Made by a program: the position numbers and the translations under genes. This document shows, piece after piece, positions 6,445 to 48,621 of a stretch of 64,000 nt of DNA. Location: positions 148,343 through 212,342 of IMG/VR virus record IMGVR_UViG_3300046170_000378; one strand, given 5' to 3'. The notes under the pieces are model-generated. The model saw only the letters and a program-made list of their open reading frames with translations. It had not been told where the DNA came from and did no database searches. Numbering within the stretch: the stretch's first letter is position 1; every line of letters starts with the position of its first letter.

Positions 6445-6468
6445 TGTCAAATATTTTTGGTATATTAG
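6445..6468 (+). promoter_or_regulatory. TGTCAA-N7-TGGTATATTAG early-promoter-like motif
   Basis: Nine copies of TGGTATATTAG, starting at 6458, 24289, 25678, 33542, 33844, 45588, 47072, 47656 and 48585. Confidence 0.75.
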
Positions 6469-6492
6469 CAATAAGATAAAACAAATAAAGAT

Positions 6493-7761
6493 ATGAAAGT
6501 GGGAAAACACACACTATTAATCGACGGTAATTATTTTGTATTCAGTAGACTATTCGTCCTACCGAAACCTAAAAATGGAGTGCCATTGCTAGGCGATGAT
6601 AAGCAAAAGTCTCAGTTTATGAGAAAGCTTGCTATTGATTTTGCATCAGAGATGCGTAAACTAAAAATGTTTGTAGATGATGTTGTATTAACAGTTGATT
6701 CTAAATCATGGCGTAAGGACTTATATCCTGAAGCAGATTACAAAGGTACTAGAAAGCAAAGTTCAGATGTGGATTGGACTGCAGTCTACGGAGTCTATGA
6801 AGAATTTCAAAAGATTGTAGCCAAAAAAGGTGTAACAGTACACCAGATCCAAGGCGCAGAAGCAGATGACGTAATTTTCGGATGGTCAACAATGCTTAAT
6901 GCACGTGGCAAATCATGTATTGTATGGTCTGGTGATAAAGATCTTATTCAATTAGTAAACTATTCAAATACTAATGATGCACACACATTGTGGTACTATA
7001 ATACACGAAAGCAATTGTATGCATATAAAGGTTTTGCAGAAGATATGGCAACCTCTGCCGCTGCAGATCTATCAAACGACGATATGTTATTCAACATGGG
7101 CGGTCAAACGATGCTTAGAGATAATTATCAAGGTGACATTACGAATTGGATTACTGCCAATAAGATCTCTATTGAGGAAATAGATTGTGACGAGTTTATT
7201 CTTAAGAAGATCTTAACGGGCGACAAATCAGATAATATTCCTGCATGTGTTACATGGCAAAAAGAAATGAAGACAGGTAAGCTTCGTAATTATTCTTTAA
7301 CAATGAAACATGCTGACACCATATATGATCAGTTTATTAAAGAATACGACAATTTTATTATAGATCACCTGTTCTCTTCTGAATACAAAGATAAGCTATC
7401 TGATATAATTTATCGTGTAGTTGGTCATAGTACGCCCACACTCATTAAAGTAGCACTGTCAACGAATATTGCACTGATGTTATTGCATAATAAAACTATA
7501 CCAGATGCAATACAACGTGCTATCTATGATTCTATTGAAAAGGATTGGGAAGGTGCAATCGAGAATAAGGATTCTATTATGGAAATGGATAAAATATTAG
7601 AAGGCACTGGATGGTTGGATAAAGAAAATAGTTTTGCTCCCGATGCATTTGCAGGTATGGACATTCCAAAAGAAGATAGCAAACCTAAAAGAAAGCCTAT
7701 GAAATTGGTAGGTAAGAAAACTAAAAAAGTAACTAAGGATCCAACTAAAAAGTTATTTTAA
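6493..7761 (+). CDS. rnh: 5'-3' exonuclease / RNase H (T4 rnh, FEN family)
   Basis: LLIDGN, WRKDLY..YKGTR, EADDVI, SGDKDLIQL, GDKSDNIP. Confidence 0.9.
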   Translation: MKVGKHTLLIDGNYFVFSRLFVLPKPKNGVPLLGDDKQKSQFMRKLAIDFASEMRKLKMFVDDVVLTVDSKSWRKDLYPEADYKGTRKQSSDVDWTAVYGVYEEFQKIVAKKGVTVHQIQGAEADDVIFGWSTMLNARGKSCIVWSGDKDLIQLVNYSNTNDAHTLWYYNTRKQLYAYKGFAEDMATSAAADLSNDDMLFNMGGQTMLRDNYQGDITNWITANKISIEEIDCDEFILKKILTGDKSDNIPACVTWQKEMKTGKLRNYSLTMKHADTIYDQFIKEYDNFIIDHLFSSEYKDKLSDIIYRVVGHSTPTLIKVALSTNIALMLLHNKTIPDAIQRAIYDSIEKDWEGAIENKDSIMEMDKILEGTGWLDKENSFAPDAFAGMDIPKEDSKPKRKPMKLVGKKTKKVTKDPTKKLF

Positions 7762-7762
7762 T

Positions 7763-7924
7763 ATGACACTGACTGATTATATTCAAATAGAAGAAATATT
7801 AGCAGAAGCAAATGCACATAATCTAAAGCCAGAAGTTATTGAGCTAGCTAACAAAATAGAAATGCTCCATGATTTTTCAAAAGTAGATGCATATCAACAT
7901 GCATTTAATACACTTATAGGGTAA
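7763..7924 (+). CDS. Small hypothetical protein (53 aa)
   Basis: ATG-TAA frame read manually, abutting rnh. Confidence 0.55.
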   Translation: MTLTDYIQIEEILAEANAHNLKPEVIELANKIEMLHDFSKVDAYQHAFNTLIG

Positions 7925-7953
7925 ACTTTCTTACCTAATAACATATAATAAGT

Positions 7954-8385
7954 ATGCTAGACGAAACTAAATTATTTGACTTCGTAAAGATAATGTTTAC
8001 GAAAAAAAGTCAATACGATAAAATAAAAAATCACAACAAAAAACGCCATCATTTTATGATCAATCGTTTTATGGCTATTAAATATCCAGCGAATGCTCAG
8101 TTGTTTAACGTTAATGGAATTAGTGGTGCTAATGTTGTAGAATCTTGGGCAATGGTAGCTCAAAGATTTAAATCTGTACCAGGGTGGTTTTATACAAAAA
8201 CCAAGAAATCGGCCACAAAAAATAAAGCTGATAAATATATTCCAACAGAACAATCTATTCAAATATATCTTAATAAAAACGAGATAGGAATGAGAGAGTT
8301 TAATGAACTTAAAGTTTTTGCAAAAGAAGAACTTTATTCTGATTTAAAAAAAATAGAAGCCCAGGTCGATGTCTACAGGAAATAG
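7954..8385 (+). CDS. Hypothetical protein, possibly clamp-loader A subunit (gp62-like)
   Basis: FMINRFMAI..P..AQLFN...W..TK loosely resembles gp62; near gp44. Confidence 0.4.
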   Translation: MLDETKLFDFVKIMFTKKSQYDKIKNHNKKRHHFMINRFMAIKYPANAQLFNVNGISGANVVESWAMVAQRFKSVPGWFYTKTKKSATKNKADKYIPTEQSIQIYLNKNEIGMREFNELKVFAKEELYSDLKKIEAQVDVYRK

Positions 8386-9019
8386 AGATAATTTTTCAGA
8401 GGTAATAGATATTACATTACATAAATATAATTCTATTGATCTAAGATTGTGGGGAATAATCTCTAGATTTTCTACCGCTAAAACTTTAGGGGACAACACT
8501 ATGTTGCTTTCAGTAGAAGATCTTAGAAAAATAATTTACAATGCATTTAAATCTGAAATATCTAGGTTTAAAGCAATAAGTGATGTTGCCATTCATAAAG
8601 AAGCCACATCTATTTACTTTATAAATCAAATATTAGATACGATGTCTAATTTGATGTGGGTTAAATTTACACTTAACACTAATTCTAGTTATAGTAGAAT
8701 CGTCAATATCGATCAAATAAAAACTATTAAATTTAGTACAAAAACACTTAGAGGTAGTATTAGACTATTTGATATTTTTAATGAACACGAAGCTGATGTA
8801 GCAGGAATGATTCTAAGAAGGGCTAATCTATTGGGACCTGAAGATCATTTTATGGTCATGAGAGTTAGAAAGTTTTTATCTACATTAGATTTATTCTTAT
8901 CAGAGAATAATACCACTGAAGTTTATAACATAATCAACGCAATCATTCAACGAGTAGAGGTATACGAATCTGATGACCCAGAGATGCTTTTAATAGCTGA
9001 CAAAAAATCAGATATATAA
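8369..9019 (+). CDS. Hypothetical protein
   Basis: 216-aa ORF in operon. Confidence 0.7.
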   Translation: MSTGNRDNFSEVIDITLHKYNSIDLRLWGIISRFSTAKTLGDNTMLLSVEDLRKIIYNAFKSEISRFKAISDVAIHKEATSIYFINQILDTMSNLMWVKFTLNTNSSYSRIVNIDQIKTIKFSTKTLRGSIRLFDIFNEHEADVAGMILRRANLLGPEDHFMVMRVRKFLSTLDLFLSENNTTEVYNIINAIIQRVEVYESDDPEMLLIADKKSDI

Positions 9020-9049
9020 ATAAAAATAGGTCGTAGACTTTAATCGTTA

Positions 9050-10987
9050 ATGGTAACTAATTTTACAGCAAATCAAATCGGTGACTTTATGTTCGCTAAA
9101 CTTGTAGATCCTTATGAGGATATTACTAAAGTTACGGGCTGGAATGTTACTACGGGTGTTTCTACACCAAATACTGTTGGACTTTTATCTATGTCTCTTG
9201 GCGGTTTCAATATCACAGGAATAGACACTAACTTAGATTTAGTTCCAGGTGAAAAAATATTGATTTCTAATTATACAGTTACTGTTGATGCTATAATTAG
9301 CCCTAACGAGTTTACTATTTTAGAAGGAGCTCCGATTTCAACTACAGGAATCAAATTCTATAAAAAACCAGATTCTAATAATCATTTTGAATATTCATAT
9401 AGATGGTCTCAAAATGGTCCTAGTACAGATGGTGGACAAATGTCTCCATCTAGGGTATTAAATATGGGTACTGGACCTAATGATTTATTAGGCCAAACAT
9501 TTGATCCTACAAAGCCGCTTTGGTTAGACGTTAAAGCAGAGGTTAATAGATTAAGTGACTACAACACAATAACATTATTAAGTGTTACATTTGAATTACT
9601 TTCTGAGAACGGTGTAATAGAAAGTTGTCCACAATTTTGTGGGGATTGTGATGACGCATGGTCAATGAGTGGATGTGCTAATATTGTTATAGACTGTGAT
9701 GCACCGTTATATGATCCATATAATTTACAGAGGCCAGTTGATACTTATAGAGATATAAGTGAATTATCTTCAGAAATGTGGGGTCACCCAGTAAAATACT
9801 TTAGAGTAGAACCTGACAAAAGGTCGAGTGATGTGGTGTTAATGGAATATTCGCTGTATAATGTAACAGAAAACGCGGAACTTAAAATAATGGTGCCAGA
9901 CAATGCAATGCCTACCCAAGAATTTCAATATGATATTTTTGGAATGGGGTTTGAAGACTTTGAGGTGCATATTACGCAAGGCCAATTTAAAGCGGCATTT
10001 GGTTTAGGACCAAGTCCTAGATCTAGAGATTACTTATATTTCCCACTAATGAATAGGATGTACGAAGTACGTACGGTTTCTTTCGCAGATGAATTCAATA
10101 TGGATATGACGTATTGGAGAGTAATGCTAACTAAATACGAAGAAAGAACAAGCTCTATACATACCGATACTGCAATTGAACAAGAGGTAGATGATTTAGT
10201 TACGGGAATAGAAGAGGTATTTGGTGAAGAGTTACAAGAAGAATATGCAAAGGTAACTAAACCAGAACAATATAAAACAGTTTTTAGTGAAGTTAATGAT
10301 GGCACTAGATATAAAATACATAATGATTTAACTATCAAAGATACTGAAATTAGAAATCAGTGGACAATCGTAGCCAAAAACTGTTATGATATGTCTAGTA
10401 TTAAAGATGTTGGCGTTGAAGCATTACAATATGTAAAAAAATCACAATTAGCAGTTGATAAAAATCTAGCAATGACACTTTGGTTTAGACCTGGTGATAA
10501 ATCATTTACTTCAATTAATCCAAATATAAACTTAGTAAAGGGTAGAACAGGATCTAAGGGATTAAGCTTAGAAACTTCTAAAGATTCAATTACAATAAAG
10601 TTAAACAACGATACACATACATTTAATTACAATTCTGAATTAGAACACAATGTATGGTATGGTGTTGTATTTAATTTAAGTAATACTTATTTCGGGCTAA
10701 GTGTTGATGTTTATAGATTAGATCCTATGAGCAATTGGCAAAACGGCCAATCAATACAGGATACATTGACTTCAGTATTATCAGAAAAACTAGATAGTAT
10801 TACCCCATATGGTTGGACAACGCCTGACAGATGGTCTCTGATGCCAGGTCCACATGAAATAACAAACATAAGGTTATTTAATAAAGTTATTGGAGATGAA
10901 CAACATATTAATCTTTTACAACAGTATGTCGTTAGAGATAATCAATATGCACATATTATCGACAATGCAATACCTTCTATCAACTAA
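9050..10987 (+). CDS. Neck/head-completion protein (T4 gp14-like core) with N-terminal extension and C-terminal LamG/ConA-like domain
   Basis: SEMWGHPVKYFR and PRSRDYLYFPLMNRMYEV..TKYEE resemble gp14; MTLWFRP..WYGVVF..ITNIRLFNK resembles LamG; late motif at 9011. Confidence 0.6.
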   Translation: MVTNFTANQIGDFMFAKLVDPYEDITKVTGWNVTTGVSTPNTVGLLSMSLGGFNITGIDTNLDLVPGEKILISNYTVTVDAIISPNEFTILEGAPISTTGIKFYKKPDSNNHFEYSYRWSQNGPSTDGGQMSPSRVLNMGTGPNDLLGQTFDPTKPLWLDVKAEVNRLSDYNTITLLSVTFELLSENGVIESCPQFCGDCDDAWSMSGCANIVIDCDAPLYDPYNLQRPVDTYRDISELSSEMWGHPVKYFRVEPDKRSSDVVLMEYSLYNVTENAELKIMVPDNAMPTQEFQYDIFGMGFEDFEVHITQGQFKAAFGLGPSPRSRDYLYFPLMNRMYEVRTVSFADEFNMDMTYWRVMLTKYEERTSSIHTDTAIEQEVDDLVTGIEEVFGEELQEEYAKVTKPEQYKTVFSEVNDGTRYKIHNDLTIKDTEIRNQWTIVAKNCYDMSSIKDVGVEALQYVKKSQLAVDKNLAMTLWFRPGDKSFTSINPNINLVKGRTGSKGLSLETSKDSITIKLNNDTHTFNYNSELEHNVWYGVVFNLSNTYFGLSVDVYRLDPMSNWQNGQSIQDTLTSVLSEKLDSITPYGWTTPDRWSLMPGPHEITNIRLFNKVIGDEQHINLLQQYVVRDNQYAHIIDNAIPSIN

Positions 10988-24240: not shown

Positions 24241-24335
24241 TTTTTTTTGAAAATAGTTTAGCCCAGATTTTTTTATGTCAAAAGAATTTGGTATATTAGT
24301 AGAGTAATTAATAGTTAAACTAAAAAAAACAAATT

Positions 24336-25214: not shown

Positions 25215-25639
25215 TGCAAGAATTATTTAAAGAAAGAGTTAATTATAACAAATTAGGTGGCAAAGAGCAAGAGGTTTATAATTTTGCTAAAACAGCAGCA
25301 GTACTAGTAGAATATGGATTTGCGTGTTCTCAGATCACAGCAGATAAGCATGGTGCAGACATGATTGCATATCATATAGATACAGCTACTCCATATTCTA
25401 TTCAGCTAAAAGGCTCCAGGGCTACACTGGATCGTAAGTATTCTGGTAAAAACATTTGGATTGCATATACAGATCGTAAAACAAATGAGCTTTGTATTTA
25501 TAATCATGATCAAGCTGCAGAGATATTTGAAAAAACCAAATCAGGTCAATGTGACACATGGAAAAACAAAGGATGGTATAGTGGAATGAGTATGCATAAA
25601 CATTTTGAAGAAATTATTACTCGTTTAAAAATAAATTGA
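25214..25639 (+). CDS. PD-(D/E)XK nuclease-like protein
   Basis: GADMIAY....YSIQLKG fits the D..(Q/E)xK pattern. Confidence 0.5.
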   Translation: MQELFKERVNYNKLGGKEQEVYNFAKTAAVLVEYGFACSQITADKHGADMIAYHIDTATPYSIQLKGSRATLDRKYSGKNIWIAYTDRKTNELCIYNHDQAAEIFEKTKSGQCDTWKNKGWYSGMSMHKHFEEIITRLKIN

Positions 25640-25712
25640 AAATAATTAGTCCCAGATTTTTTTATGTCAATTATTTGTGGTATATTAGTATTGTATTTAA
25701 AAGCTAAAAGAT

Positions 25713-32966: not shown

Positions 32967-33484
32967 TGGCAATATTTGTAACATCCAATCTCCAGCTCGG
33001 AAGACCTGGTGCAATCAAAAAATATAATAGGAATTACGACAACGTTGATCAAATGACAGAAGATCTTATTCTGAAGTGGAACGAAGTCGTAAAACAAGAG
33101 GATACCGTATATCATTTAGGTAATTTTGCTTGGGATCCAAAGACTGCACAAGATGCACTATTGCGTCTTAATGGTAGAATTTATTTTACAAGGGGTGATC
33201 ACGATAAAGCTTTAGAAGTTTTAGACGAAAAGGGAATGCTTAGAAATAGAGTACAGATGATTGATTGTCTTACTACCCTACCAGAACTCAATCTTAGTTT
33301 AACATATTGGCCATTAAAAGCGTGGCCTAATAAAAGAGGTAAAAAAGCATATAACATTATAGGTTATCCTGAAAAGAAATTTAAATCAGATCCAAAAGAA
33401 AGAATCATTAATGTTTCTACTGATTTATGGAAGAACCAACCACAAGACCTTAATAAATTATTAGAAATATTTTCAGATTTCTAA
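32966..33484 (+). CDS. Calcineurin-like phosphoesterase homolog with degenerate metal ligands
   Basis: SNLQLG, DTVYHLGNF and RGDHD in place of SDxHxG, LGD and GNHD. Confidence 0.7.
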   Translation: MAIFVTSNLQLGRPGAIKKYNRNYDNVDQMTEDLILKWNEVVKQEDTVYHLGNFAWDPKTAQDALLRLNGRIYFTRGDHDKALEVLDEKGMLRNRVQMIDCLTTLPELNLSLTYWPLKAWPNKRGKKAYNIIGYPEKKFKSDPKERIINVSTDLWKNQPQDLNKLLEIFSDF

Positions 33485-33576
33485 TTGTTCGTAACTTTTA
33501 GTAAAATAACCGTCATTTAATTTTTTTATGTCGGTTATTTGTGGTATATTAGTACTGTATTTAAAAGCTAAAAGAT

Positions 33577-33801: not shown

Positions 33802-33882
33802 TTAAAAATAATTCAGCCCAGATTTTTTTATGTCAAAAAGATTTGGTATATTAGCCTAGTAATAATTAAAAAAAGAAAACAT

Positions 33883-34494
33883 ATGTCAAAATCAAAAGAG
33901 TTAAGCTACCGTCAGCTATCAGAGAATTTCATCAATTCTAAATCAGAAAAAGATTATAATGCGCTTTACGTTCGTGTGAAGCCAGGTTTGAAAAACTACA
34001 TTCATAATGTGGTCAAAGATAATGAAGCTACAGATGATATTTTGACAAATACTCTTACGAAGATGTGGACCAAGATAGATCAATATGATCCTAAATATCA
34101 AATCACTACATGGCTTTATCGTATTGCCTTTAATGAATGTCTTGGTTGGATTCGTCAACGTAATCGTAAATATAGCATCGATGCAATGAAAGAATATGGT
34201 ATTGAAATCTCAGAACACTATTCTCATACATCAGCTCATGATCTTCTTATTGAGATTGAGAGTAAAACCGAAGCAGATTTTATTGAAGAAGACGAAGCAC
34301 TTATGAATTCTTATGAATTGGCACTAAAAGCAATTCAAGATCTAAAGCCAATGTATCGAGATATTATCGAAGATCGTCTACTTAACAACATGAAATACGA
34401 AGATATTGCATCAAAGTATGGTGTGCCTCTTCAAACTGTTAAGAATCGTATCCGTAGGGGTAAGATTTTGATTCAAGAATCAATGACAAAATAA
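33883..34494 (+). CDS. ECF-type (sigma-70 family, group 4) RNA polymerase sigma factor
   Basis: Region 2 (DDILTNTLTKMW..IDQYD....TWLYRIAFNEC) and region 4 HTH (LKPMYRDII..MKYEDIA..VPLQTVKNRIRRGK); no regions 1 or 3. Confidence 0.9.
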   Translation: MSKSKELSYRQLSENFINSKSEKDYNALYVRVKPGLKNYIHNVVKDNEATDDILTNTLTKMWTKIDQYDPKYQITTWLYRIAFNECLGWIRQRNRKYSIDAMKEYGIEISEHYSHTSAHDLLIEIESKTEADFIEEDEALMNSYELALKAIQDLKPMYRDIIEDRLLNNMKYEDIASKYGVPLQTVKNRIRRGKILIQESMTK

Positions 34495-36916: not shown

Positions 36917-36919
36917 CTT

Positions 36920-39958: not shown

Positions 39959-39985
39959 AAAAAAAAGAGGGCCGAAGCCCTCTTT
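39959..39985 (-). terminator. Terminator for the minus-strand operon
   Basis: AAAGAGGGC-CGAA-GCCCTCTTT hairpin; the A-run reads as a U-tract on the minus strand. Confidence 0.8.
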
Positions 39986-39986
39986 C

Positions 39987-40259: not shown

Positions 40260-40273
40260 AATTAATTTTGTTT

Positions 40274-42073
40274 TTATCTAAATATGGTTATATGTCCGGA
40301 TCTTTGGTAAACTTCTGGAGAATTCCATTTACGTGCATAGAATGTATATGTGTAAACACCGTCTGAAACATAGCTCGGTCCATTATTAACACTTCCATTC
40401 CAATATGGATATGAATCAAAATCATCACCATATCCATGATAAATCTCACTACCCCATCTGTTAAAGACCCTAAACTCAACATCGACCCAGCAATTTAGAT
40501 CATAGATCATTTTCCATACATCGTTGATGCCATCGTTGTTAGGTGTAAATGTATTAGGTATAAAAACGGTCCATGGCCAGCATTCTTGCATACCGGGATC
40601 ATCAACACATGGCATACCGGTTTCGCAATCTACAGGAATGAACTCAGTTATAGTGTCTGTTAAATACACATACTCTACGACATCAATAAATGTGGTGTCA
40701 TATTGAGTTACATATAATGTATCAGTTATGAACACAGGAACCTCTACCTCAACAGTGTCTATCACATCAATATAAATAGTATCAGTTATGAACACAGGAA
40801 CCTCTACCTCAACGGTGTCTATTATGTTTACATAAACAGTATCGGTTATTGTTATCGTTTCATATTCACATGAACCATCGTCTTCTTCTGCATTTGGGTC
40901 AAAGTTAATTGCACATATATCTGTGCATCCTACTTCTGGCTCACACAGTGGAACAGGCGGTAAGTTCACAACAGTAGTGTTATTACCAGTAACTATTTCG
41001 TCATTAACAGTATTAACTTCTATTACAAATAATCCACCTTCAGACCAACCTTCTGGAAATACAAACTGTCCAGTATTAAATGTTTGACCTTCACCTGGCG
41101 GTATTTGTAAAATCATACTATCTCCACTATCATAACAAAACGTCGCGTCGGGATGCCAAAGTTCTACACAATATGTGTTCATATCAATGTCACCAGAATT
41201 AGTTATAGTAAATTGAACTTGATAATATGGATTTCCAGAGGCATCACAGCCGGTTATGAATTCAACATTTCCGGCTACTTGTGCATCTGTTGAGCCTTCA
41301 GGTGGATAGACACAGCTACCATCATCTTCAGTTGCATTTGGTTCATAATTTAATGCATCGGGATCGGTACAACCTGGAATAACAACAGTTTCGCAAATGA
41401 AATCTTCACCCTGGATCATTGCAGGTCCAGGATTGTCTTCTCTACAAACTGACCATGAATTATCACAATCCATATCTGGATATATTTGCACATTTGAAAG
41501 TGGCTGTTGTCCATCGTCATTAGCACCTAATTCAGCCCAACCTCCACCTGGGGCGTTAGGGCCATCATTTTGATACCATGAGTTTGAATAGTTTATTTGC
41601 CAAATAACAAACTCTACACATTCTCCTTGATCTAGCCAATAATCAATTACTGGAGCAGCACAGCAGCCTATTGCTGGAGAACCATCACAATTACCATTAC
41701 TTGGATTATCTAGCTCTACAACAAAGGTATCTCCAGTGTACAGTGGAAATTCTGAACTAGCATAATTTGATGGAAAATCAGAAGCTGATGGACCATACCA
41801 CCAACCAGGATGATTAGAAGTTGGTGCCATAAAACATGGACCATCGTCGTCTACATCGACAGCTTCATTTTGACCAGGAATATGAAAGCCAATCATTACC
41901 ATATTGACATGATCATTACTTCCATTATATCCAGTAGCTCCGCAGCCCTCGCCGTTAATGACTTCAACTGTAACTTCATAAGTATTTAAATTTACATCTG
42001 TAATTGCCAAATCACATTGACCTGAAATCACAAATACATGAAAAAACGTAAGTAAAAATAATAATCTTTTCAT
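40274..42073 (-). CDS. Secreted protein with T9SS type-B (gliding-motility-associated CHU_C) C-terminal domain
   Basis: Signal peptide; GCTDPDALNY..ATEDDGSC repeats; ITDT.Y repeats with a 60-bp duplication; IPNTFTPNNDGINDVW..VFNRWG..WNG..DGVYTY. Confidence 0.85.
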   Translation of the reverse strand: MKRLLFLLTFFHVFVISGQCDLAITDVNLNTYEVTVEVINGEGCGATGYNGSNDHVNMVMIGFHIPGQNEAVDVDDDGPCFMAPTSNHPGWWYGPSASDFPSNYASSEFPLYTGDTFVVELDNPSNGNCDGSPAIGCCAAPVIDYWLDQGECVEFVIWQINYSNSWYQNDGPNAPGGGWAELGANDDGQQPLSNVQIYPDMDCDNSWSVCREDNPGPAMIQGEDFICETVVIPGCTDPDALNYEPNATEDDGSCVYPPEGSTDAQVAGNVEFITGCDASGNPYYQVQFTITNSGDIDMNTYCVELWHPDATFCYDSGDSMILQIPPGEGQTFNTGQFVFPEGWSEGGLFVIEVNTVNDEIVTGNNTTVVNLPPVPLCEPEVGCTDICAINFDPNAEEDDGSCEYETITITDTVYVNIIDTVEVEVPVFITDTIYIDVIDTVEVEVPVFITDTLYVTQYDTTFIDVVEYVYLTDTITEFIPVDCETGMPCVDDPGMQECWPWTVFIPNTFTPNNDGINDVWKMIYDLNCWVDVEFRVFNRWGSEIYHGYGDDFDSYPYWNGSVNNGPSYVSDGVYTYTFYARKWNSPEVYQRSGHITIFR

Positions 42074-43345
42074 TATCTAATAAATATTTTTCTAGTAATA
42101 ACAATACCACCGATGTATTCTTCTACCTGAATATAAAATCCTGGAGTTAGATCACCATACTCAGAGTATGTTCTACCTAATATGTCCACCCATTTTACTT
42201 CAACTATGTCATCATCTAAGTTTCTCACTAAATTTTTAAGATTACCTGATTCAATCATACCCGCATCTCCAGTATCACATTCAGTACCATAATTGACTAA
42301 AAATAAAGTAAGATCATTAACATCTACGACTCCGTCATAGTTAAAATCTGCAGGCAAACATGCTCCGGTTTGGGTGTGCCACGTCAAATAATCTAAAAAG
42401 TCATTGATATTAATATATCCGTTTCCGTCTAAATCCCATGGACAATTACCTAAATCACATCCACTACATTCATTATTAATAGCTGCAGTTCTACCCAATT
42501 CTAATTGAGCGTGCATTCTATTAATTTGACCAGGAGTAAATAAATCTTGACAATTATCAGGCGCATATGACATATAAGATTCGTCGACCTCATCTATATC
42601 TGGACAAGCATCTTGACACGACCAATCAATTGCAGTTGGGGGCGTATCACAAACCCTATCACCTTCAAGTTCACAATCAACTTCGTTAAGAGCAGTAGGT
42701 ACAAGAATAGTTGTTACCGAATAAGTCTCTAGAAAAAGTGTGAGATAATCCACACCAGTGTCCAGCCTCATGTGTAAATGTTTTAGAATCAGAATCTACT
42801 ACTTCTGTAGCTCTAACCCAAACACCAACATTAGCAGGTGGAAGAGCAGTAAATCCTAAAATTCCACCACTCCATTCACCAATGTAGACTTCCATAATGT
42901 CACCGGTGTTTTCACCTATTTCATTTTGAACTTGATTATAACAATATATTGGGTTACTACACCACGAAGATAATTCCGATTCTTCATAAAACCTAACATC
43001 CTCCAAACAAAAAGAAATATCAGTGTTATTGATTTCAAATTGTTCATTTAGATAATCAAATTCATTTTGAATGTCTAATTCAGTAAAATCATACGTGCTT
43101 TGAATAACGTGTATAATTGTAGGAATTGTTTTAAGTGTATTTTGTTGTCTCGCTAACTTTTTTTCTACAGCGTCCTGTAGAGCAAAGAAGGATCTAGCGA
43201 ACTTCTCATCTTTGAGCTCTTCGCTAGTAGTTATAGCTTGCCCACATTTCTCAACGTGATGTAAGCTCTTTTGTGCAATGGCAGTATTAATAGTCAATAG
43301 ACATACCACGGCACTCATAAAAACAGATAGTTTTTTGAGTTGCAT
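42073..43345 (-). CDS. M43 (pappalysin-like) zinc metalloprotease with dockerin/EF-hand repeats and T9SS type-A-like tail, +1 indel at ~42699
   Basis: THEAGHWCGLSHTF, GDRVCDTPP, YMSY...FTPGQ..RM, DLDGNGYININD, C-terminal VDILGR..GFYI..TRKI. Confidence 0.8.
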
Positions 43346-43587
43346 TTAATAACAGTTTATTTTGATTTCTAGCCCATAGAAGTTTAAATGTCGGCGTTCC
43401 GACAGGGCATACCATATATATCGAAAAAGAAGCTTATTTTTATATTTGTGTTGAGCGTTTTTTAAAAAATATTAAATATTTTTACACTAAACACTATACA
43501 TAATAGATGAATATTTAAATAAATCAGACCAACAACCGAGATATATAGATTAATTACACTCATGTAATAAAAAAATAATCAGATATT

Positions 43588-43830
43588 ATGGCATTTAAAG
43601 ACATATTTAAAGACAGTAATGACATTAATGAAAAAAATGTTGTAGGTTTTGCATCATTCGCAATCATGTCGCTGTTTGCACTGGCTGATTTGGTTACTGG
43701 TTTCTTTGGTGAAACATTAACTATTGACGATACTATTTTTAACTCATTTGTAATTGTTACTCTTGGTTCATTTGGTATCGATGGTGTTACTAAAATCTTC
43801 AAAAAATCTGAAGGTAATAAAGAAGGATAA
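43588..43830 (+). CDS. Small 2-TM membrane protein, possible holin
   Basis: Two hydrophobic helices, charged C-terminus, late motif at 43540, upstream of endolysin. Confidence 0.45.
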   Translation: MAFKDIFKDSNDINEKNVVGFASFAIMSLFALADLVTGFFGETLTIDDTIFNSFVIVTLGSFGIDGVTKIFKKSEGNKEG

Positions 43831-43847
43831 AAAATACAAACTTAATA

Positions 43848-44042
43848 ATGAGAAAGAAGATGATAGCATTGTCGTTAAGTTCAATATTATTATTCGGATG
43901 TGGCGCTAGTAAGCCTGCATCGGACGGATGTTGCAAACAAGAGGCACATTTAACAGAAAGAGCAGCTGATGAAGGAATATTAAATGGTTTATTGTTTACA
44001 TTAATAACTTACGCGATACTTAGTACTTTAAAAATAAACTAA
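43848..44042 (+). CDS. Small lipoprotein-like protein
   Basis: LLFGC lipobox-like. Confidence 0.5.
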   Translation: MRKKMIALSLSSILLFGCGASKPASDGCCKQEAHLTERAADEGILNGLLFTLITYAILSTLKIN

Positions 44043-44055
44043 GAATAAAGAGAAC

Positions 44056-44937
44056 ATGATTTTAAAGAAAGGAACAAGAGGTAAAGAAGTTAAACAACTC
44101 CAAGAGTATTTAGAAATAGGTGCAGATGGTGTATTCGGGCCTGGAACTGAAGCTGCAGTAAAAAAGTGGCAAAAAGAAAATAGCTTAGTAGTAGATGGCA
44201 TCGTTGGTCCTAAAACATGGGAAGCCATGGGATTAGCAACTACGGACGAAAGCGAGCAAGTTTATACAACTGATAATGGTTTAATTGTTAATAGACATTT
44301 CTTACCAAAGGGTGAATACTTAAATGGTCCATCTAAAAAAGAATATTGTTTCTTACACCACACAGCTGGTTGGAATAATCCATATAAAACTGTTAGAAAT
44401 TGGGGTAATGACACTAGAGGCCGCATTGCTACAGAGTTTGTGTTAGGTGGGCAAAAACTCACTAATGGTAACAATGACTACGATGGTGTAATGGTACAGT
44501 GTATGCCAGAAGGAGCATATGGATGGCATTTAGGCAAGAACGGATCACAGTATATGCACAAACATTCAGTAGGTATTGAAGTTAATAACTTTGGTTACTT
44601 AAAGAACGGTAAAGCATATCAAGGTAGTACTGCTCACGAATCTCAAATAGTAGAGTTAGCAGAATCATTTAGAGGCTACAAACAATGGCATAGATATTCA
44701 GATGCACAAATAGAAGCATTAGATAAATGGATTCGTTGGATTGGCGAAAGAGATGGTATTGATATTAGAGCTGGATTGCCAGCATTGGTTAAAGAAAAAG
44801 GTGCAGCGGCATTTGAGTGGAACGCAGACGCTTATTATGGTAAAGTCAAAGGTCTATGGACTCACACTAATACTAGAAAAGATAAGACTGATATGTTTCC
44901 ACAGCAGGAGCTTTTAGATTTATTAACTTCGTTATAA
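44056..44937 (+). CDS. Endolysin: peptidoglycan-binding domain + amidase_2
   Basis: VKQLQ..DGVFGPGTEAAVK.WQ..DGIVGPKTW; LHHTAG, SVGIEV, WTHTN.RKDKTD. Confidence 0.88.
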   Translation: MILKKGTRGKEVKQLQEYLEIGADGVFGPGTEAAVKKWQKENSLVVDGIVGPKTWEAMGLATTDESEQVYTTDNGLIVNRHFLPKGEYLNGPSKKEYCFLHHTAGWNNPYKTVRNWGNDTRGRIATEFVLGGQKLTNGNNDYDGVMVQCMPEGAYGWHLGKNGSQYMHKHSVGIEVNNFGYLKNGKAYQGSTAHESQIVELAESFRGYKQWHRYSDAQIEALDKWIRWIGERDGIDIRAGLPALVKEKGAAAFEWNADAYYGKVKGLWTHTNTRKDKTDMFPQQELLDLLTSL

Positions 44938-45066
44938 GATATGAATAAGAATTGTAAATGCACTTCATGTAAGTGCAACCCTAAACCCGAGCGAGTTAGT
45001 TTGTGGACCAAGTTTAAAAAGAGGTTTATGAGATTAATGAGTTAGATTAAATATACGTAGAAGAAT

Positions 45067-45555
45067 ATGTTGAGGCAGATGAAATTTTTGATAATAATGA
45101 TCTTAATGATCACTCAAATAAAAACAAAAACTAAGCCCAAACCTCAGTCTATTCCTATAAATAATTTAATCTCTATTGATTATAAAACCTGGCAACCTAA
45201 AGATTTTCATAAAGAGTGGATTAGAGATAGTCTACAGCCAGGAATACCTCAAATTCCATGGACAATTAATTGGGAATATCAACCACTAAATCACAGAATA
45301 GCTGGAATTACCAGACACATTGACACACGATACATTCTAATAGATTTAAATCCATTATATGCATATGAATGGGATCATGTTTTTATGCACGAATTAATAC
45401 ATGCTCAGCAAATAATTAGAGGAGATCTTGTACAAGAAGGCGATATATGGTATTGGAAAGGCGAAGTAGTAGATTGGTCAATTTCATGGGCAAATAGACC
45501 ATGGGAGATAGATGCTGAAGAAAGGGCAAAAAGTTTTATAAATAGTAGAAAATAA
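45067..45555 (+). CDS. Putative zinc metallopeptidase (HExxH)
   Basis: FMHELIHAQQ...RPWEIDA. Confidence 0.6.
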   Translation: MLRQMKFLIIMILMITQIKTKTKPKPQSIPINNLISIDYKTWQPKDFHKEWIRDSLQPGIPQIPWTINWEYQPLNHRIAGITRHIDTRYILIDLNPLYAYEWDHVFMHELIHAQQIIRGDLVQEGDIWYWKGEVVDWSISWANRPWEIDAEERAKSFINSRK

Positions 45556-45615
45556 TTGCTTCTAGATTTTTTTATGTCAATTATTTGTGGTATATTAGTA
45601 GTATAATTAAAAGCT

Positions 45616-45777
45616 ATGAGCAAGAAAAGGAAATATGATGATAATTTAAACTTCAATGGAGGGTGGTCCTCTGGTGAAGCAGCACATCACATTTCTAAAA
45701 AAATGACTGAACAGACTGTAAAGTCAAAGAAAGCATATACTAGAAAGAAGAAGCATAAAAATAAAGACGATGAGTAA
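45616..45777 (+). CDS. Small basic early protein
   Basis: Manually read; directly follows the early motif. Confidence 0.55.
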   Translation: MSKKRKYDDNLNFNGGWSSGEAAHHISKKMTEQTVKSKKAYTRKKKHKNKDDE

Positions 45778-46447
45778 AATAGTAGTTGTAGGAGATATTC
45801 ATGGGTGTGACAGGTGGAAAGACCTTGTTCATATGCATTCTGATGCTACCGAGTTTGTATTCATTGGGGATTACTTTGATTCTTTTACCAGAAATCACGC
45901 AGAGTGTATTTATAATTTTAAAGAAATTATCGAGTGGAAAGAATCTACCAACATTAAAGTAACTATGTTGATCGGTAATCATGATTTCCACTATATGTCA
46001 GAATGTGGAGGAAGATATGGTGGATGGAGCGCTTGGCATGCTGCTGAAATTGGAGAATTGCTTAAAGCAAATAAACACCACCTACAAGTGGCATATCAGT
46101 ATGATAAATATTTGTTTACTCATGCTGGTGTTTCTAAACAATGGTACGAAGCCAATTTTCCGGAAGAAGGTGATATTGTAGAACAAATCAATGACCTGTG
46201 GTCATATGATAAGCGACCATTTAATCACAGCGGCATGGAAATGTATGGTAATTATGATGGTGAAGGACCGATGTGGATTAGACCCGCTGCGTTGAGAAGA
46301 AATATGCTTAATGAGTCTATTGTTCAAATCGTAGGACATACCCACATGGAAGTAATCGATTATGATGATAATCACTATTTTATCGATACTCTTCCACATG
46401 AATACATGACAATTGAAAATGGTGTTCCAGTCATTTACGAACTATAA
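45770..46447 (+). CDS. Calcineurin-like metallophosphoesterase
   Basis: GDIHG, GDYFD, GNHD, THAG, GHT all intact. Confidence 0.9.
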   Translation: MSKIVVVGDIHGCDRWKDLVHMHSDATEFVFIGDYFDSFTRNHAECIYNFKEIIEWKESTNIKVTMLIGNHDFHYMSECGGRYGGWSAWHAAEIGELLKANKHHLQVAYQYDKYLFTHAGVSKQWYEANFPEEGDIVEQINDLWSYDKRPFNHSGMEMYGNYDGEGPMWIRPAALRRNMLNESIVQIVGHTHMEVIDYDDNHYFIDTLPHEYMTIENGVPVIYEL

Positions 46448-46449
46448 AT

Positions 46450-47040
46450 ATGGAAATCTACGTAGCACCACCGCGAGGCAAAAAAGAAAAAGAGGCATGT
46501 TTGTTTTGGTTAAACCATTTCGGACATGAGGTTATTTGGTTAGATCTAAGGCGTAAAGTTAAAGGTCCATTATTGCTTTGTGGTGGTGCTGACATAGGAA
46601 AAGATCCAGAACGAGACAAGAAAGAATTTATTTGGATCAAACAAGCACTAGATGGTGGACATAAAATCCTCGGAATATGTAGAGGTATGCAAATATTAAA
46701 CACCTATTTCGGTGGTACAGTAATAGATTTACCAGATATTATAGTTGAAGAACATAAGGCTGCTGACTTTTCAGAGAACATAGATCACAGCGGAAAGCCA
46801 TCACAATTCCATACAGTAGAAGATCTTGATGGTAATTTGATCAATGTTAATTCAAGACATCATCAATACTGTAATATTATAGCAGATAATTTTAAAACAA
46901 CACATATATCATTTCCAATGAACTCGATCGTTGAGGGATTTGAAGATCTAGAAAACCAGATCTGGGCAGTACAATGGCATCCAGAAAAAATGGAGTCAGA
47001 AAACAACGAATATCCTTTAGATAAACTTTTTCGAAAATAA
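46450..47040 (+). CDS. Class I glutamine amidotransferase / peptidase C26 (PuuD-like)
   Basis: LCGGADI, GICRGMQ, VNSRHHQ, AVQWHPE. Confidence 0.88.
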   Translation: MEIYVAPPRGKKEKEACLFWLNHFGHEVIWLDLRRKVKGPLLLCGGADIGKDPERDKKEFIWIKQALDGGHKILGICRGMQILNTYFGGTVIDLPDIIVEEHKAADFSENIDHSGKPSQFHTVEDLDGNLINVNSRHHQYCNIIADNFKTTHISFPMNSIVEGFEDLENQIWAVQWHPEKMESENNEYPLDKLFRK

Positions 47041-47101
47041 TTCACCAGGATTTTTTTATGTCAATTATTTGTGGTATATTAGTACTATAATTAAAAACTA
47101 A

Positions 47102-47617
47102 ATGAGAAAGGCACCAAACACAGTTGATCATCAAGAATGGAACGAACAGTTCTTACCAATTATGTGGGCGTTTGTTCAGAGTTATCAAGCATCTGAAAAT
47201 AGTTTCTTAAAAAAGAAAATCAAAGAAGCACTTAAACGTACTATTTACAAGTGGACAGATTTGCCACCTAAATATGTTTCTACAGAGATCATAAGACTTT
47301 TTGAAGAGAATGGTATCGAAGAAGATCCATTTAATCTTATATACACCGACCGTAAAATGTTGGGTAGAGATGAGAACGGTAGAACTATTATGTTGTGGGA
47401 ACACACAACAACAAATCACGAAACTTATCAAACATTTGTTAAGTGTCAATCTCAAGAAGAATTAAAAGAAGCAATGTCAAACCACACTGGAGTTTGTTGG
47501 ATTACTCGCGAAGAGGACAACAGACTCAATAAGAGTGGATTTAGATCAAATAGAGAAGAAGGCTGGAAAGCGGTTTATGAAAAATGCGGTATAAACGTAA
47601 TTGTTCGTAACTTTTAA
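47102..47617 (+). CDS. Early hypothetical protein
   Basis: Follows early motif; WEH..C...EEDNRL may be nuclease-like. Confidence 0.65.
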   Translation: MRKAPNTVDHQEWNEQFLPIMWAFVQSYQASENSFLKKKIKEALKRTIYKWTDLPPKYVSTEIIRLFEENGIEEDPFNLIYTDRKMLGRDENGRTIMLWEHTTTNHETYQTFVKCQSQEELKEAMSNHTGVCWITREEDNRLNKSGFRSNREEGWKAVYEKCGINVIVRNF

Positions 47618-47697
47618 AAATAAACAGCAAAAAGCTTTCCCCGTTAAAATAAAAGTGGTATATTAGTACTGTAATTAAAAAGCTAAAAATAAAAAAT

Positions 47698-48015
47698 ATG
47701 TCAAACATCCTAACATTCGTACTTAGAAACTCCATGGGAGATTCAACAAACAACGGTCTAACTTCAAGAGAAGACTCAATTATTCTGCACCACGGCCCAG
47801 ATGTCGATTTAGCAGATTTAACTCTAATTCCAGATGATGAATTAGTTTTAGTAGAAAGACAACTATTTGGAGAAGATGCGTTTTATGCAGTTCCTGCCGG
47901 ATTATACAAGAACAACAAACACACAATGTTTGGTGGTAACTTTATCCACACTTCAGATTCTAGATTTCCAGGTAGAGCACCGATTCCAGTTCACGACAGA
48001 GTAGAAAATAATTAA
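47698..48015 (+). CDS. Early hypothetical protein
   Basis: MFGGNF..TSDSRF..PIPVHDR motif; follows early motif. Confidence 0.7.
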   Translation: MSNILTFVLRNSMGDSTNNGLTSREDSIILHHGPDVDLADLTLIPDDELVLVERQLFGEDAFYAVPAGLYKNNKHTMFGGNFIHTSDSRFPGRAPIPVHDRVENN

Positions 48016-48033
48016 TCACTTAAAAATAAAATT

Positions 48034-48219
48034 ATGCAATTATCAGAACTAAAAGCTTACGCTGAAAAATTATCCAACGCATTTCCACAAATGGATGAAC
48101 AAATTAGAGATCTTTATTTTCTAGCAGTAGATGAGGTAGAAAGTGGAGAATCAGAGGCAAACGAATGCGAATTAGCGTATTCAGATATGAATGAATTAAC
48201 GGGCGTTAATGAGCACTAA
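48034..48219 (+). CDS. Hypothetical protein
   Basis: ORF track. Confidence 0.6.
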   Translation: MQLSELKAYAEKLSNAFPQMDEQIRDLYFLAVDEVESGESEANECELAYSDMNELTGVNEH

Positions 48220-48562
48220 AACGTATACATTTCCACCAGATGATTGCTATGGTGATGTTTTCGCCATGGTAAACACTGCTTCGGGTACTTATGTATGCCC
48301 CGGTTGGCATCCAGTACCTAAGGGAACTACTAGGGATCAGATTAAATTTAGTAAGAGTACTAAAGTAGTAAAACCAAAAGCTGCGCCAGTGATCACTAAA
48401 ACTGAGAACAGATCATGGAAAGTAGAGTCATCAAAACCTGGTAAATTCTATGAAGTTACCGAAAGAGATGGAGTTTGGGGATGTGATTGTCCTGCAATGA
48501 ACTTCTTTAGAGGTGACTGTAAACACATTAAGGCTAAAAAAAGTGAAAATATTTTAGCCTAG
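48209..48562 (+). CDS. SWIM zinc-finger protein
   Basis: WGCDCP......CKHI. Confidence 0.75.
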   Translation: MSTKTYTFPPDDCYGDVFAMVNTASGTYVCPGWHPVPKGTTRDQIKFSKSTKVVKPKAAPVITKTENRSWKVESSKPGKFYEVTERDGVWGCDCPAMNFFRGDCKHIKAKKSENILA

Positions 48563-48621
48563 ATTTTTTTATGTCAAAAAGATTTGGTATATTAGTAGAG
48601 TAATAATTAAAGAAAGAAAAC

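What the first reader, a model, noticed from the sequence alone, without database searches (positions are those of the whole stretch)
6445..48595. Nine near-identical early-type promoter modules that do not fit the Bacteroidota housekeeping consensus
Seen: (T5-7)ATGTCAA-N7-TGGTATATTAG, often with upstream AAAATAATT..CCAGA. TGGTATATTAG starts at 6458, 24289, 25678, 33542, 33844, 45588, 47072, 47656 and 48585, each 22-45 nt before a start codon of small hypothetical genes, rnh or the sigma gene. Known: Bacteroidota primary-sigma promoters are TTTG/TAnnTTTG, which this motif does not match. Inference: it is read by a packaged phage factor or repressor, or it doubles as a recombination homology arm for shuffling early gene cassettes.
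Basis: partly seen in the sequence, partly recalled or inferred. Interest (0 to 1): 0.65.

Follow-up and report, generated by a model that had tools for sequence, protein, structure and literature searches.

The report
Portable early-promoter cassettes of marine phages
The nine repeats are real copies of a 70-80 bp promoter cassette in front of early genes of a marine jumbo phage, one base away from the normal Bacteroidota promoter box, shared with unrelated small phages and often found where gene cassettes have been shuffled.

Summary
TGGTATATTAG occurs exactly at the nine stated sites, far above chance. All nine are intergenic and point at a start codon 17-36 nt after the core.

The window is the last 64 kb of a 212-kb marine jumbo-phage record with about 23 such modules. 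I collected 119 distinct copies from this record and related metagenomic contigs.

The claim that it does not fit the Bacteroidota consensus is overstated:
- TATATTAG matches TAnnTTTG at 5 of 6 defined positions.
- It sits the right distance from a purine and from the ATG, with a T-run at -33.
- Homologous modules in Chryseobacterium phage MA9V-1 carry the perfect TATATTTG.

The A at -6 is nevertheless invariant. It is not used by a candidate host MAG, which uses TTTG.

No phage RNA polymerase gene was found. The ECF-type sigma gene lies behind a module. A separate motif, GATATATAA, precedes the structural genes.

Near-identical modules occur in unrelated 25-31 kb phages. Rearrangement junctions between relatives carry a module more often than conserved junctions (12/39 vs 11/95).

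Best reading: host-RNA-polymerase early promoters that also act as recombination cassettes, analogous to T4 PeSLs. No transcription start was mapped. New variant of a known kind.

The parts
6416..6483 (+). Module 1 (core 6458-6468; TTGTCAA form). Predicted start about 6473. Leads the 5'-3' exonuclease / RNase H-type gene 6493-7761.
24247..24314 (+). Module 2 (core 24289-24299; N7 = AAGAATT form). Predicted start about 24304. Leads the 124-aa LPD29-domain gene 24336-24710. Several relatives lack this module together with the about 7 kb downstream of it.
25636..25703 (+). Module 3 (core 25678-25688). Predicted start about 25693. Leads a 76-aa ORF 25713-25943, then the ATP-dependent DNA ligase 25928-27238.
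33482..33567 (+). Module 4 (core 33542-33552; ATGTCGG form). The upstream arm is TAA-TTGTTCGTAAC-TTTT at 33485 instead of the usual A-tract context. Predicted start about 33557. Leads the 74-aa ORF 33577-33801.
33802..33869 (+). Module 5 (core 33844-33854; N7 = AAAGATT form). Predicted start about 33859. Leads the sigma gene.
33883..34494 (+). ECF-type sigma factor, 203 aa (Sigma70_r2 and r4_2). The best NCBIfam subfamily is the Bacteroidetes type TIGR02985, below its cut-off. It is a product of module 5 and the inferred driver of a later promoter class.
45546..45613 (+). Module 6 (core 45588-45598). Predicted start about 45603. Leads a 53-aa ORF, then a metallophosphoesterase (45770-46447) and a class-I glutamine amidotransferase / peptidase C26 (46450-47040).
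47030..47097 (+). Module 7 (core 47072-47082). Predicted start about 47087. Leads the 171-aa ORF 47102-47617. In relatives L069 and L089 this gene lies next to the homologue of 33577-33801.
47598..47681 (+). Module 8, variant B (core 47656-47666). It has no T-run and no ATGTCAA. The upstream arm is TTGTTCGTAAC at 47601 followed by CTTTCCCCGTTAAAATAAAAG. Predicted start about 47671. Leads the 105-aa ORF 47698-48015. The same variant precedes the sigma gene in relatives L090 and L092.
48543..48610 (+). Module 9 (core 48585-48595; N7 = AAAGATT form). Predicted start about 48600. Leads the 66-aa ORF 48622-48822. In relative L092 the homologue of this gene lies directly upstream of the sigma gene.

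Best explanation
Each copy is a portable cassette of about 70-80 bp that carries an early promoter of the Bacteroidota primary-sigma (-33/-7) type.

Numbering the box TATATTAG as -12 to -5, the cassette holds:
- an A-tract at -54 to -48;
- a T-run at -36 to -30;
- TGTCAA at -28 to -23;
- an AT-rich turn, then TGG at -15 to -13;
- the -7 box itself;
- a purine at the predicted start, 15 nt after the first base of TGGTATATTAG;
- a conserved A-rich leader of 13-32 nt without a Shine-Dalgarno sequence.

Inferred mechanism. Unmodified host RNA polymerase with the host primary sigma fires these promoters as soon as the DNA enters. They express small takeover genes, nucleotide, repair and replication enzymes, and the phage's own ECF-type sigma. 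A later class of promoters (GATATATAA) then expresses the virion genes.

Because the cassettes are long, near-identical direct repeats, homologous recombination between them also moves 'promoter plus gene' units. This happens within a genome and between co-infecting phages.

Shown here: the anatomy, its conservation, its homology to canonical-box modules in cultured relatives, the two motif classes and the genes each precedes, the sharing across phage lineages, and the excess of modules at rearranged junctions.

For: Fit to the known consensus.
- TAnnTTTG lies at -12 to -5, with no G at -10 or -9 and 4-5 nt to the start (papers PMC6847099 and PMC9723704).
- The module box matches 5 of 6 defined positions.
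- Position +1 is A or G in 116 of 119 copies, and T-35 to T-33 are kept in 114-115 of 119.
- Shine-Dalgarno-like words are depleted upstream of genes, 14/299 against 25/299 inside genes.

Host lineage.
- Relatives by protein similarity infect Flavobacteriales.
- The sigma's best NCBIfam subfamily is the Bacteroidetes type.

Homology to canonical promoters.
- MA9V-1 has about 25 modules with the same A-tract, T-run and TGTCAA-N10 frame, carrying TATATTTG or TAAATTTA. One of them stands before its sigma gene.
- In pT24, TATATTTG occurs 31 times upstream of genes against 1.8 expected.

No phage polymerase or alternative early class.
- Rpb1, Rpb2 and T7-type families are absent from the 212 kb held, and none of the 38 proteins of 326 aa or more scanned against PHROGs is one.
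- In G000 only two motifs are enriched between genes: the module and GATATATA[AG]. Canonical TAHHTTTG is not enriched there (22 of 223 copies fall in the 9% non-coding DNA).
- Module-led genes are an exonuclease, ligase, sigma, phosphatases, a nucleotidase, a polynucleotide-kinase-type phosphatase domain and small ORFans.
- GATATATAA precedes the portal, major head protein and tail sheath genes.

A shared reader.
- Three small phage genomes rated 100% complete (24.7-30.6 kb) have their own terminase and portal and no homologues in G000. They carry modules 81-87% identical to G000's over 68 nt.
- Their sigma-like protein is unrelated in sequence to G000's (BLASTP E = 1).

Shuffling.
- 12 of 39 rearranged gene junctions carry a module, against 11 of 95 conserved ones (odds ratio 3.4, p = 0.011).
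Against: - No transcription start was mapped. The only RNA libraries found are kept as contigs, which cannot show starts, and one contig runs through a module.
- The candidate host MAG uses TTTG. TATATTAG is not enriched upstream of its genes (2 observed, 1.3 expected).
- TGTCAA at -28 to -23 has no counterpart in that MAG's promoters.
- So the cassette is not simply the host consensus, and a helper factor could be required.
- The host is not identified. The link to the MAG rests on binning of phage contigs.
- The record is about 76% complete, so a polymerase or another early region could be missing.
- Both phage lineages that carry the module encode a sigma-like protein.
- Most rearranged junctions (27 of 39) have no module, and the loci compared were chosen because they hold a module.
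Confidence: 0.6

Rival explanations
1. Host polymerase reads the -7 box only with a helper. A protein that binds TGTCAA at -28 to -23, or that needs A at -6, would act as activator or repressor. It could be host-encoded, or injected with the DNA in the manner of T4 Alt, or work on promoters in the manner of T4 MotA. That would make the module a phage-specific promoter class.
For: - TGTCAA is strongly conserved and keeps its spacing to the box in MA9V-1, which has another host.
- It is absent from promoters of the candidate host MAG.
- A-6 is invariant and not host-like.
- In the ATATTTG form of the module, CAAATATTTG is a perfect 10-bp palindrome overlapping this region.
Against: - BLASTP found no shared protein other than a protease-like domain between the jumbo and the small phages that carry near-identical modules, so a common phage factor is unlikely.
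- Variant B modules lack TGTCAA altogether, yet they precede the sigma gene in relatives.
- No candidate binding protein was identified.
Confidence: 0.17
2. The modules are middle promoters read by the phage-encoded ECF-type sigma, with the sigma gene positively autoregulated. The true immediate-early promoters would lie elsewhere, perhaps in the missing quarter of the genome.
For: - Every phage lineage with the module also has a sigma-like gene.
- The box differs from the host's at an invariant position.
- Canonical host boxes are not enriched in G000 intergenic DNA.
Against: - The sigma proteins of the two lineages are unrelated in sequence, while their modules are 81-87% identical.
- The sigma genes lie downstream of modules.
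- The architecture is of the -33/-7 type, not the AAC / CGT type usual for ECF sigmas (my own knowledge; CGT box noted in PMC9723704).
- The homologous module before the MA9V-1 sigma gene has a perfect primary-sigma box.
- A second, separate motif already accounts for the late genes.
Confidence: 0.1
3. The repeat is mainly a recombination or mobility element, a homology arm or the end of a small mobile cassette, and its promoter likeness is secondary or inactive.
For: - Modules are enriched at rearranged junctions.
- They are shared between unrelated phages at higher identity than among the copies within G000.
- RNA-library contigs join one module to the downstream region of another.
Against: - Every copy has a strict orientation and distance to a downstream ATG.
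- Position-specific conservation coincides with known promoter elements.
- No transposase, integrase or terminal inverted repeats are associated with the modules.
- Most junctions lack a module.
- The joints seen in contigs may be assembly effects at repeats.
Confidence: 0.05

Closest known systems
Bacteroidota primary-sigma promoters (-33 TTTG / -7 TAnnTTTG; F. johnsoniae and F. psychrophilum start-site maps, PMC6847099, PMC9723704)
   Same: - The box has the same length and place: T-12, A-11, non-G at -10 and -9, T-8, T-7, G-5.
- There are 4-5 nt to a purine start.
- The turn at about -18 is AT-rich, and T's lie at -36 to -33.
- Leaders are short and lack a Shine-Dalgarno sequence.
   Different: - A replaces the nearly invariant T at -6 in all 119 copies.
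- There is no G in the -33 element.
- TGTCAA at -28 to -23, TGG at -15 to -13, an A-tract at -54 to -48 and the first 10 nt of the leader are conserved in addition.
- The whole block is repeated as a unit.
PeSL cassettes (promoter-early stem-loops) of T4-type phages (PMC2839356, PMC4122927)
   Same: - They are repeated composite early-promoter motifs with an AT-rich upstream part.
- They are concentrated in front of small ORFan genes in plastic regions.
- They are found at insertion, deletion and replacement boundaries between relatives.
- They are proposed vehicles of modular shuffling and horizontal transfer.
   Different: - PeSLs carry an exact sigma-70 consensus and an integral G+C-rich stem-loop terminator. 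Here the box is one base off the host type.
- No consistent stem-loop is present. Only the left-end subfamily has CCCAGATTTTGGG.
- No terminator-like sites accompany the modules.
- The hosts and the phage lineage differ.
- Mini-circles were not tested.
Repeated intergenic modules of Chryseobacterium jumbo phages MA9V-1 / MA9V-2 (not described as promoters in PMC10537231)
   Same: - The frame is homologous: TTTGAAAATA.TTGC, a T-run, TGTCAA, 10 nt, the -7 box, then TAyTATAA.
- There are about 25 copies, co-oriented with genes, one of them before the sigma gene.
   Different: - Their box is the canonical TATATTTG, or TAAATTTA / TATATTTA. TATATTAG is not enriched.
- Their sigma is a longer protein annotated as RpoS-like.
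- GATATATA[AG] is absent from that genome.
T4 early and middle promoters (extended early consensus helped by the injected Alt protein; MotA box replacing -35). From my own knowledge.
   Same: - Phage promoters are conserved far beyond the host's requirements.
- An extra box lies about one helical turn upstream of the -10 type element.
- A late class consists of a -10-type motif alone (TATAAATA in T4; GATATATAA here).
   Different: - No MotA, AsiA or Alt homologue was found or sought specifically.
- The sigma type is different.
- The resemblance is functional only.

Membership tests
Bacteroidota primary-sigma (-33/-7) promoter | A -7 box TAnnTTTG with T-12, A-11, T-8, T-7, T-6 and G-5 nearly invariant | tested here: not met
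   Five of six positions are met. Position -6 is A in 119 of 119 copies.
Bacteroidota primary-sigma (-33/-7) promoter | No G at -10 or -9 (TAHHTTTG) | tested here: met
   T at -10 in 117 of 119 copies and A at -9 in 119 of 119.
Bacteroidota primary-sigma (-33/-7) promoter | Transcription starts 4-5 nt after the box | tested here: inconclusive
   A purine stands 5 nt after the box in 116 of 119 copies. The only RNA libraries found are kept as contigs, which cannot show starts.
Bacteroidota primary-sigma (-33/-7) promoter | A -33 element TTTG 19-21 nt upstream of the box | tested here: inconclusive
   A conserved T-run lies at -36 to -30, with T-35 to T-33 kept in 114-115 of 119 copies, but there is no G. 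The element is weak in Flavobacterium and in the candidate host MAG as well.
Bacteroidota primary-sigma (-33/-7) promoter | Transcribed by host core polymerase with the primary sigma | not testable with these tools
   This needs in vitro transcription or a reporter assay in a host.
PeSL-type mobile regulatory cassette | A repeated early-promoter motif in front of variable small genes | tested here: met
   There are about 23 copies in G000 and 119 distinct copies in this record and related contigs. They stand before small ORFans and accessory enzymes.
PeSL-type mobile regulatory cassette | An integral stem-loop terminator or attenuator | tested here: not met
   Only 3 of 19 G000 copies (z of -2.7 or lower) have a stable hairpin upstream. 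No terminator-like sites lie at the modules in 33000-49500. The left-end subfamily is the exception.
PeSL-type mobile regulatory cassette | Lies at indel or replacement boundaries between related genomes | tested here: met
   12 of 39 rearranged junctions carry a module against 11 of 95 conserved ones, p = 0.011. Caveat: the loci compared were chosen for holding a module.
PeSL-type mobile regulatory cassette | Excised mini-circles formed between neighbouring copies | not testable with these tools
   Contigs join neighbouring modules, but this may be an assembly effect at repeats.
ECF-sigma promoter | A -35 with AAC and a -10 with CGT, 16-17 nt apart | tested here: not met
   No such pair is conserved in the module. 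One chance-like GTAAC-N15-CGTC occurs at 33485 only.
Promoter of a phage-encoded or virion RNA polymerase (phiKZ, N4 or crAss type) | The phage encodes such a polymerase | tested here: not met
   PF00562, PF00623 and PF00940 give no match in six frames. Of the 38 proteins of 326 aa or more scanned against PHROGs, none is a polymerase; another 11 proteins of 350 aa or more were not scanned. Caveats: the record is 76% complete, very divergent enzymes could be missed, and the PF00940 search had no positive control.

The most novel reading that the evidence does not exclude
The invariant A at -6 together with the TGTCAA box marks a dedicated, phage-only promoter class in marine Flavobacteriia. Host genes do not use it, and it works only with a specificity factor or a particular state of the host polymerase. 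It circulates as a mobile promoter cassette among unrelated phages (a jumbo myovirus and 25-31 kb tailed phages) of the same host. That would be a Bacteroidota counterpart of PeSLs with its own recognition code.
Probability: 0.2. Interest if true: 0.7.

Novelty: new variant of a known kind. Interest (0 to 1): 0.45.

Why it matters
Transcription signals of phages that infect Bacteroidota are barely charted, and those of marine flavobacterial jumbo phages not at all.

This work gives a testable map for an abundant seawater phage group: predicted early promoters with start sites, a separate late motif, and a sigma factor between them.

It also gives three concrete questions:
- What does the invariant T-to-A change at -6 do to recognition by the unusual Bacteroidota primary sigma?
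- What reads TGTCAA at -25?
- Are the cassettes the recombination points that shuffle early genes, and are they passed between unrelated phages?

The module could also serve as a strong portable promoter for genetic tools in marine Flavobacteriia.

Tried and rejected
- **DNA searches of the phage collection.** Megablast and blastn of 6-10 kb of the window found no match. The module itself finds only the MA9V phages among isolates.
- **Exact scan of bacterial genomes for the module.** 0 hits.
- **Host identification.**
  - An Atlas look-up of the PGA_cap protein gave no useful taxa.
  - The small phages' terminase has no close cultured relative.
  - One accessory gene of a relative led to a Flavobacteriaceae MAG that turned out to hold binned phage contigs. 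I used it only as a candidate host.
- **Expression.** The six RNA runs found are kept as contigs. Laid on 44800-49800 (5,001 letters), they show presence but no starts.
- **Reading TGGTATATT as a sigma-70 extended -10.** Considered and set aside for four reasons:
  - Relatives infect Flavobacteriales.
  - No Shine-Dalgarno sequences are used.
  - The AG after the hexamer is invariant.
  - A binned relative has TCG instead of TGG.
- **The reverse strand.** It reads TTGACA-N16/17-AATTAT. This would point into the upstream gene, and I regard it as a look-alike.
- **TTGTTCGTAAC as an ECF promoter.** Not consistent between copies.
- **An integral stem-loop.** Not found.
- **The 'small phages have no sigma' argument.** I first held it and withdrew it after finding a divergent ECF-like protein in them.
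- **Mutational data on the -7 box.** The paper sought, PMC1828668, is not held.
- **Not used.** The large representative protein search, structure prediction and complex prediction. No genetic code other than table 11 was used.

Full report
**What the window is**

The 64-kb window is the right-hand end (148343-212342) of a 212,342-bp IMG/VR virus record, rated about 76% complete. It has 32-39% G+C, and nearly all genes are on one strand. It carries 12 tRNA genes.

It encodes a portal, head protease, major head protein, terminase, tail sheath, baseplate wedge and collagen-like fibres. One large conserved protein has its nearest cultured relatives in jumbo phages of Tenacibaculum, Chryseobacterium and Flavobacterium. 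More distant matches are Sphingomonas phage PAU and the Lak phages.

Three observations make a host in the Bacteroidota, probably Flavobacteriia, likely but not proven:
- Shine-Dalgarno-like words are depleted upstream of its genes (14/299 against 25/299 inside genes).
- Its sigma factor scores best with a Bacteroidetes ECF subfamily.
- The stretch 44800-49800 of the window is held by 14 seawater or marine DNA runs from as many studies.

**The observation**

TGGTATATTAG is exact at all nine stated sites and at a tenth, 19472. With one mismatch allowed there are 12 matches against 2.0 expected, and no shuffle reaches 12. The longer pattern with ATGTCAA gives 9 matches against 0.19 expected.

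The nine listed copies are intergenic and co-oriented with an ATG 17-36 nt after the core. The copy at 47656 lacks the T-run and ATGTCAA. The copy at 19472 lies inside a 1133-aa ORF without module flanks.

Genome-wide there are 19 full copies plus four diverged ones at the left end, all pointing at a gene. They average 70% pairwise identity over 68 nt, while the flanks are at the random level of 26-29%.

**Anatomy**

I collected 119 distinct copies from this genome and from related metagenomic contigs. I numbered the box TATATTAG as -12 to -5, as in the Bacteroidota -7 element. The conserved blocks are:
- AAAATAA at -54 to -48;
- a T-run at -36 to -30;
- TGTCAA at -28 to -23;
- an AT-rich turn at -21 to -17;
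- G-16, T-15, G-14, G-13;
- the box itself;
- TA at -4 and -3;
- a purine at +1 (116 of 119 copies);
- TAAT at +2 to +5, then an A-rich leader.

Even so, A-11, A-9, T-8, A-6 and G-5 never vary.

Two upstream arms can replace the usual one. One is TAA-TTGTTCGTAAC-TTTT (33485, 47601 and the left-end copies). The other is 'variant B', CTTTCCCCGTTAAAATAAAAG (47656), which is the form that precedes the sigma gene in relatives.

**Comparison with the host-type promoter**

In Flavobacterium johnsoniae the box TAnnTTTG occupies -12 to -5. T-12, A-11, T-8, T-7, T-6 and G-5 are nearly invariant, there is no G at -10 or -9, and 4-5 nt separate the box from the start. The -33 element is weak, and AT-rich motifs lie at -18 and -28 (PMC6847099). 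F. psychrophilum shows the same box with minor variants (PMC9723704).

The module therefore matches 5 of 6 defined positions and has the right geometry. Leaders of 13-32 nt follow if the start is 15 nt after the first base of the core.

Cultured relatives show where the module comes from:
- Chryseobacterium phage MA9V-1 has about 25 intergenic modules with the same frame: TTTGAAAATA.TTGC, a T-run, TGTCAA, 10 nt, the box, then TAyTATAA. Their box is the perfect TATATTTG or TAAATTTA. One stands before the gene that its authors annotate as a sigma factor.
- In Tenacibaculum phage pT24 the most enriched 8-mer upstream of genes is TATATTTG (31 observed, 1.8 expected). It is often followed by TAsTGTAwTT, as in this phage.

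The module is a one-base variant of a canonical promoter family.

**What is really unusual**

The T-to-A change at -6 is fixed.

An accessory gene of a relative led to a marine Flavobacteriaceae MAG. Six of its contigs carry 18 modules of the form TGTCA[AG]-N7-TCGTATATTAG, which means a relative of this phage was binned with a bacterium. In 381 kb of that MAG's bacterial contigs:
- TAHHTTTG is enriched upstream of genes (82 observed, 16.8 expected), with TATATTTG the top 8-mer.
- TATATTAG is not enriched (2 observed, 1.3 expected).
- TAHHTTAG is enriched no more than AT-rich background words.
- The MAG's promoters show no TGTCAA at -28 to -23.

If that bacterium is the host, which binning alone does not prove, the phage box and the -25 box are not host-like.

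Within the phage itself, canonical TAHHTTTG is not enriched between genes (22 of 223 copies fall in the 9% non-coding DNA).

**Who reads it**

Six-frame searches for the Rpb2, Rpb1 and T7-type families found no RNA polymerase gene. PHROG scans of 38 proteins of 326 aa or more found none either. Another 11 proteins of 350 aa or more were not scanned, and the T7-type search had no positive control.

There is one clear sigma gene, of ECF type, and it lies directly behind module 5.

Only two motifs are enriched in intergenic DNA: the module and GATATATA[AG]. The latter has 33 copies, 32 of them on the gene strand and 26 in non-coding DNA. The two motifs stand before different kinds of gene:
- The module precedes an exonuclease, ligase, sigma, phosphoesterase, amidotransferase, 5'-nucleotidase, a polynucleotide-kinase-type phosphatase and many small ORFans.
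- GATATATAA precedes the portal, major head protein and sheath genes.

This is the usual early and late layout.

**Unrelated phages with the same module**

About twenty contigs that hold the full module share almost no DNA (at most 6% aligned) and at most one protein domain with this phage. Three of them are genomes rated 100% complete, 24.7-30.6 kb long. They have their own terminase, portal, protease and long tail protein. Their modules are 81-87% identical over 68 nt to modules of this phage.

I first took these phages to lack a sigma. They do encode a divergent ECF-like protein (TIGR02937, E = 8e-8, below the cut-off). It is unrelated in sequence to the jumbo phage's sigma (BLASTP E = 1). 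In one of them it lies in the operon that the modules head.

Two non-homologous sigmas are unlikely to read the same 70-bp sequence. A shared host polymerase is the simpler reader.

**Recombination**

Relatives at 70-85% DNA identity have the same genes in other orders:
- In L092 the homologue of 48622-48822 sits between two modules directly upstream of the sigma gene.
- In L069 and L089 the homologue of 47102-47617 (95% identical) follows that of 33577-33801.
- Several relatives lack module 2 together with the 7 kb behind it.

Counting distinct gene junctions gives 12 of 39 rearranged junctions with a module, against 11 of 95 conserved ones (odds ratio 3.4, p = 0.011).

Three caveats apply. 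The loci were chosen for holding a module. Most rearranged junctions have none. The joints between modules seen in RNA-library contigs may be assembly effects.

Unlike T4-type PeSLs (PMC2839356, PMC4122927), the cassette has no consistent stem-loop or terminator.

**Verdict**

The feature is real and widespread. It is most likely a family of host-read early promoters that also serve as recombination cassettes (confidence about 0.6).

The rivals, in order, are a required helper at TGTCAA or A-6, reading by the phage sigma, and a mainly recombinational role. No start site, timing or reader was measured. I rate it a new variant of a known kind, of moderate interest.

Noticed in passing
window 1284, 2928, 9011, 11047, 13590, 16515, 18654, 35662, 37067, 39958(-), 43540, 55449: A second promoter-like motif, GATATATA[AG]. 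The genome has 33 copies, 32 on the gene strand and 26 in the 9% non-coding DNA. They lie 4-60 nt before the portal, major head protein, sheath and other virion genes, often right after a terminator hairpin. It is probably the late promoter class. ATATATAA is also enriched in pT24, but the motif is absent from MA9V-1.
   Followed up: partly
G000 4145(-); loci L027, L029, L031, L038, L046, L092 (3194); G006 7194(-): In a sub-family of modules the leader begins TAGTATACTAATGGAGGTTA..ACCTC, a 5' hairpin that hides a GGAGG. It occurs in both the jumbo relatives and the small phages. In G006 the next module follows after 95 nt, so this copy may produce a short non-coding RNA.
   Followed up: no
window 33485-33495 and 47601-47611; G000 5315(-), 3922(-), 3428(-), 1325(-): TAA-TTGTTCGTAAC-TTTT replaces the A-tract arm in some modules, at a fixed distance. 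The left-end copies also have a small hairpin CCCAGATTTTGGG and a box CACGTATATTAG or TATATTTAC. Its function is unknown.
   Followed up: partly
L116:12741-13271 (-) in the small phage G008; homologues in G006 (636-1142) and G007 (9937-10461): The 25-31 kb phages that share the module encode a divergent ECF-like sigma of about 170 aa. It falls below family cut-offs (TIGR02937 E = 8e-8) and is unrelated in sequence to the jumbo phage's sigma.
   Followed up: partly
G011 (MAG 'Flavobacteriaceae bacterium SAT1509'), contigs C10, C12, C26, C33, C35, C39: A species-representative bacterial MAG contains six contigs with 18 modules (TCGTATATTAG form). A relative of this jumbo phage was binned into a bacterial genome. 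That gives a host lead, but it is also contamination of the MAG.
   Followed up: partly
window 19472-19482: A tenth exact TGGTATATTAG lies inside the 1133-aa ORF 19212-22613 without module flanks. The same core is kept in relative G002 at 108239. It could be an internal promoter or coding constraint.
   Followed up: no
window 34831-34946: Rfam gives a 116-nt tRNA match (42.5 bits) in the tRNA cluster that ARAGORN did not call. It may be a tRNA with an insertion or a degenerate copy.
   Followed up: no
minus strand of modules, e.g. window 33836-33808, 45580-45552, 47064-47037, 48577-48548: The reverse complement of the module reads TTGACA-N16-18-AATTAT/AATATT, a sigma-70-type look-alike pointing into the upstream gene. 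It is probably meaningless in a Bacteroidota host.
   Followed up: no
window 44800-49800, RNA-library contigs: Contigs from marine metatranscriptome libraries join one module to the downstream region of another (for example 45612 to 48640, and 47097 to 47599). These are either natural cassette variants in the population or assembly effects at the repeat.
   Followed up: no
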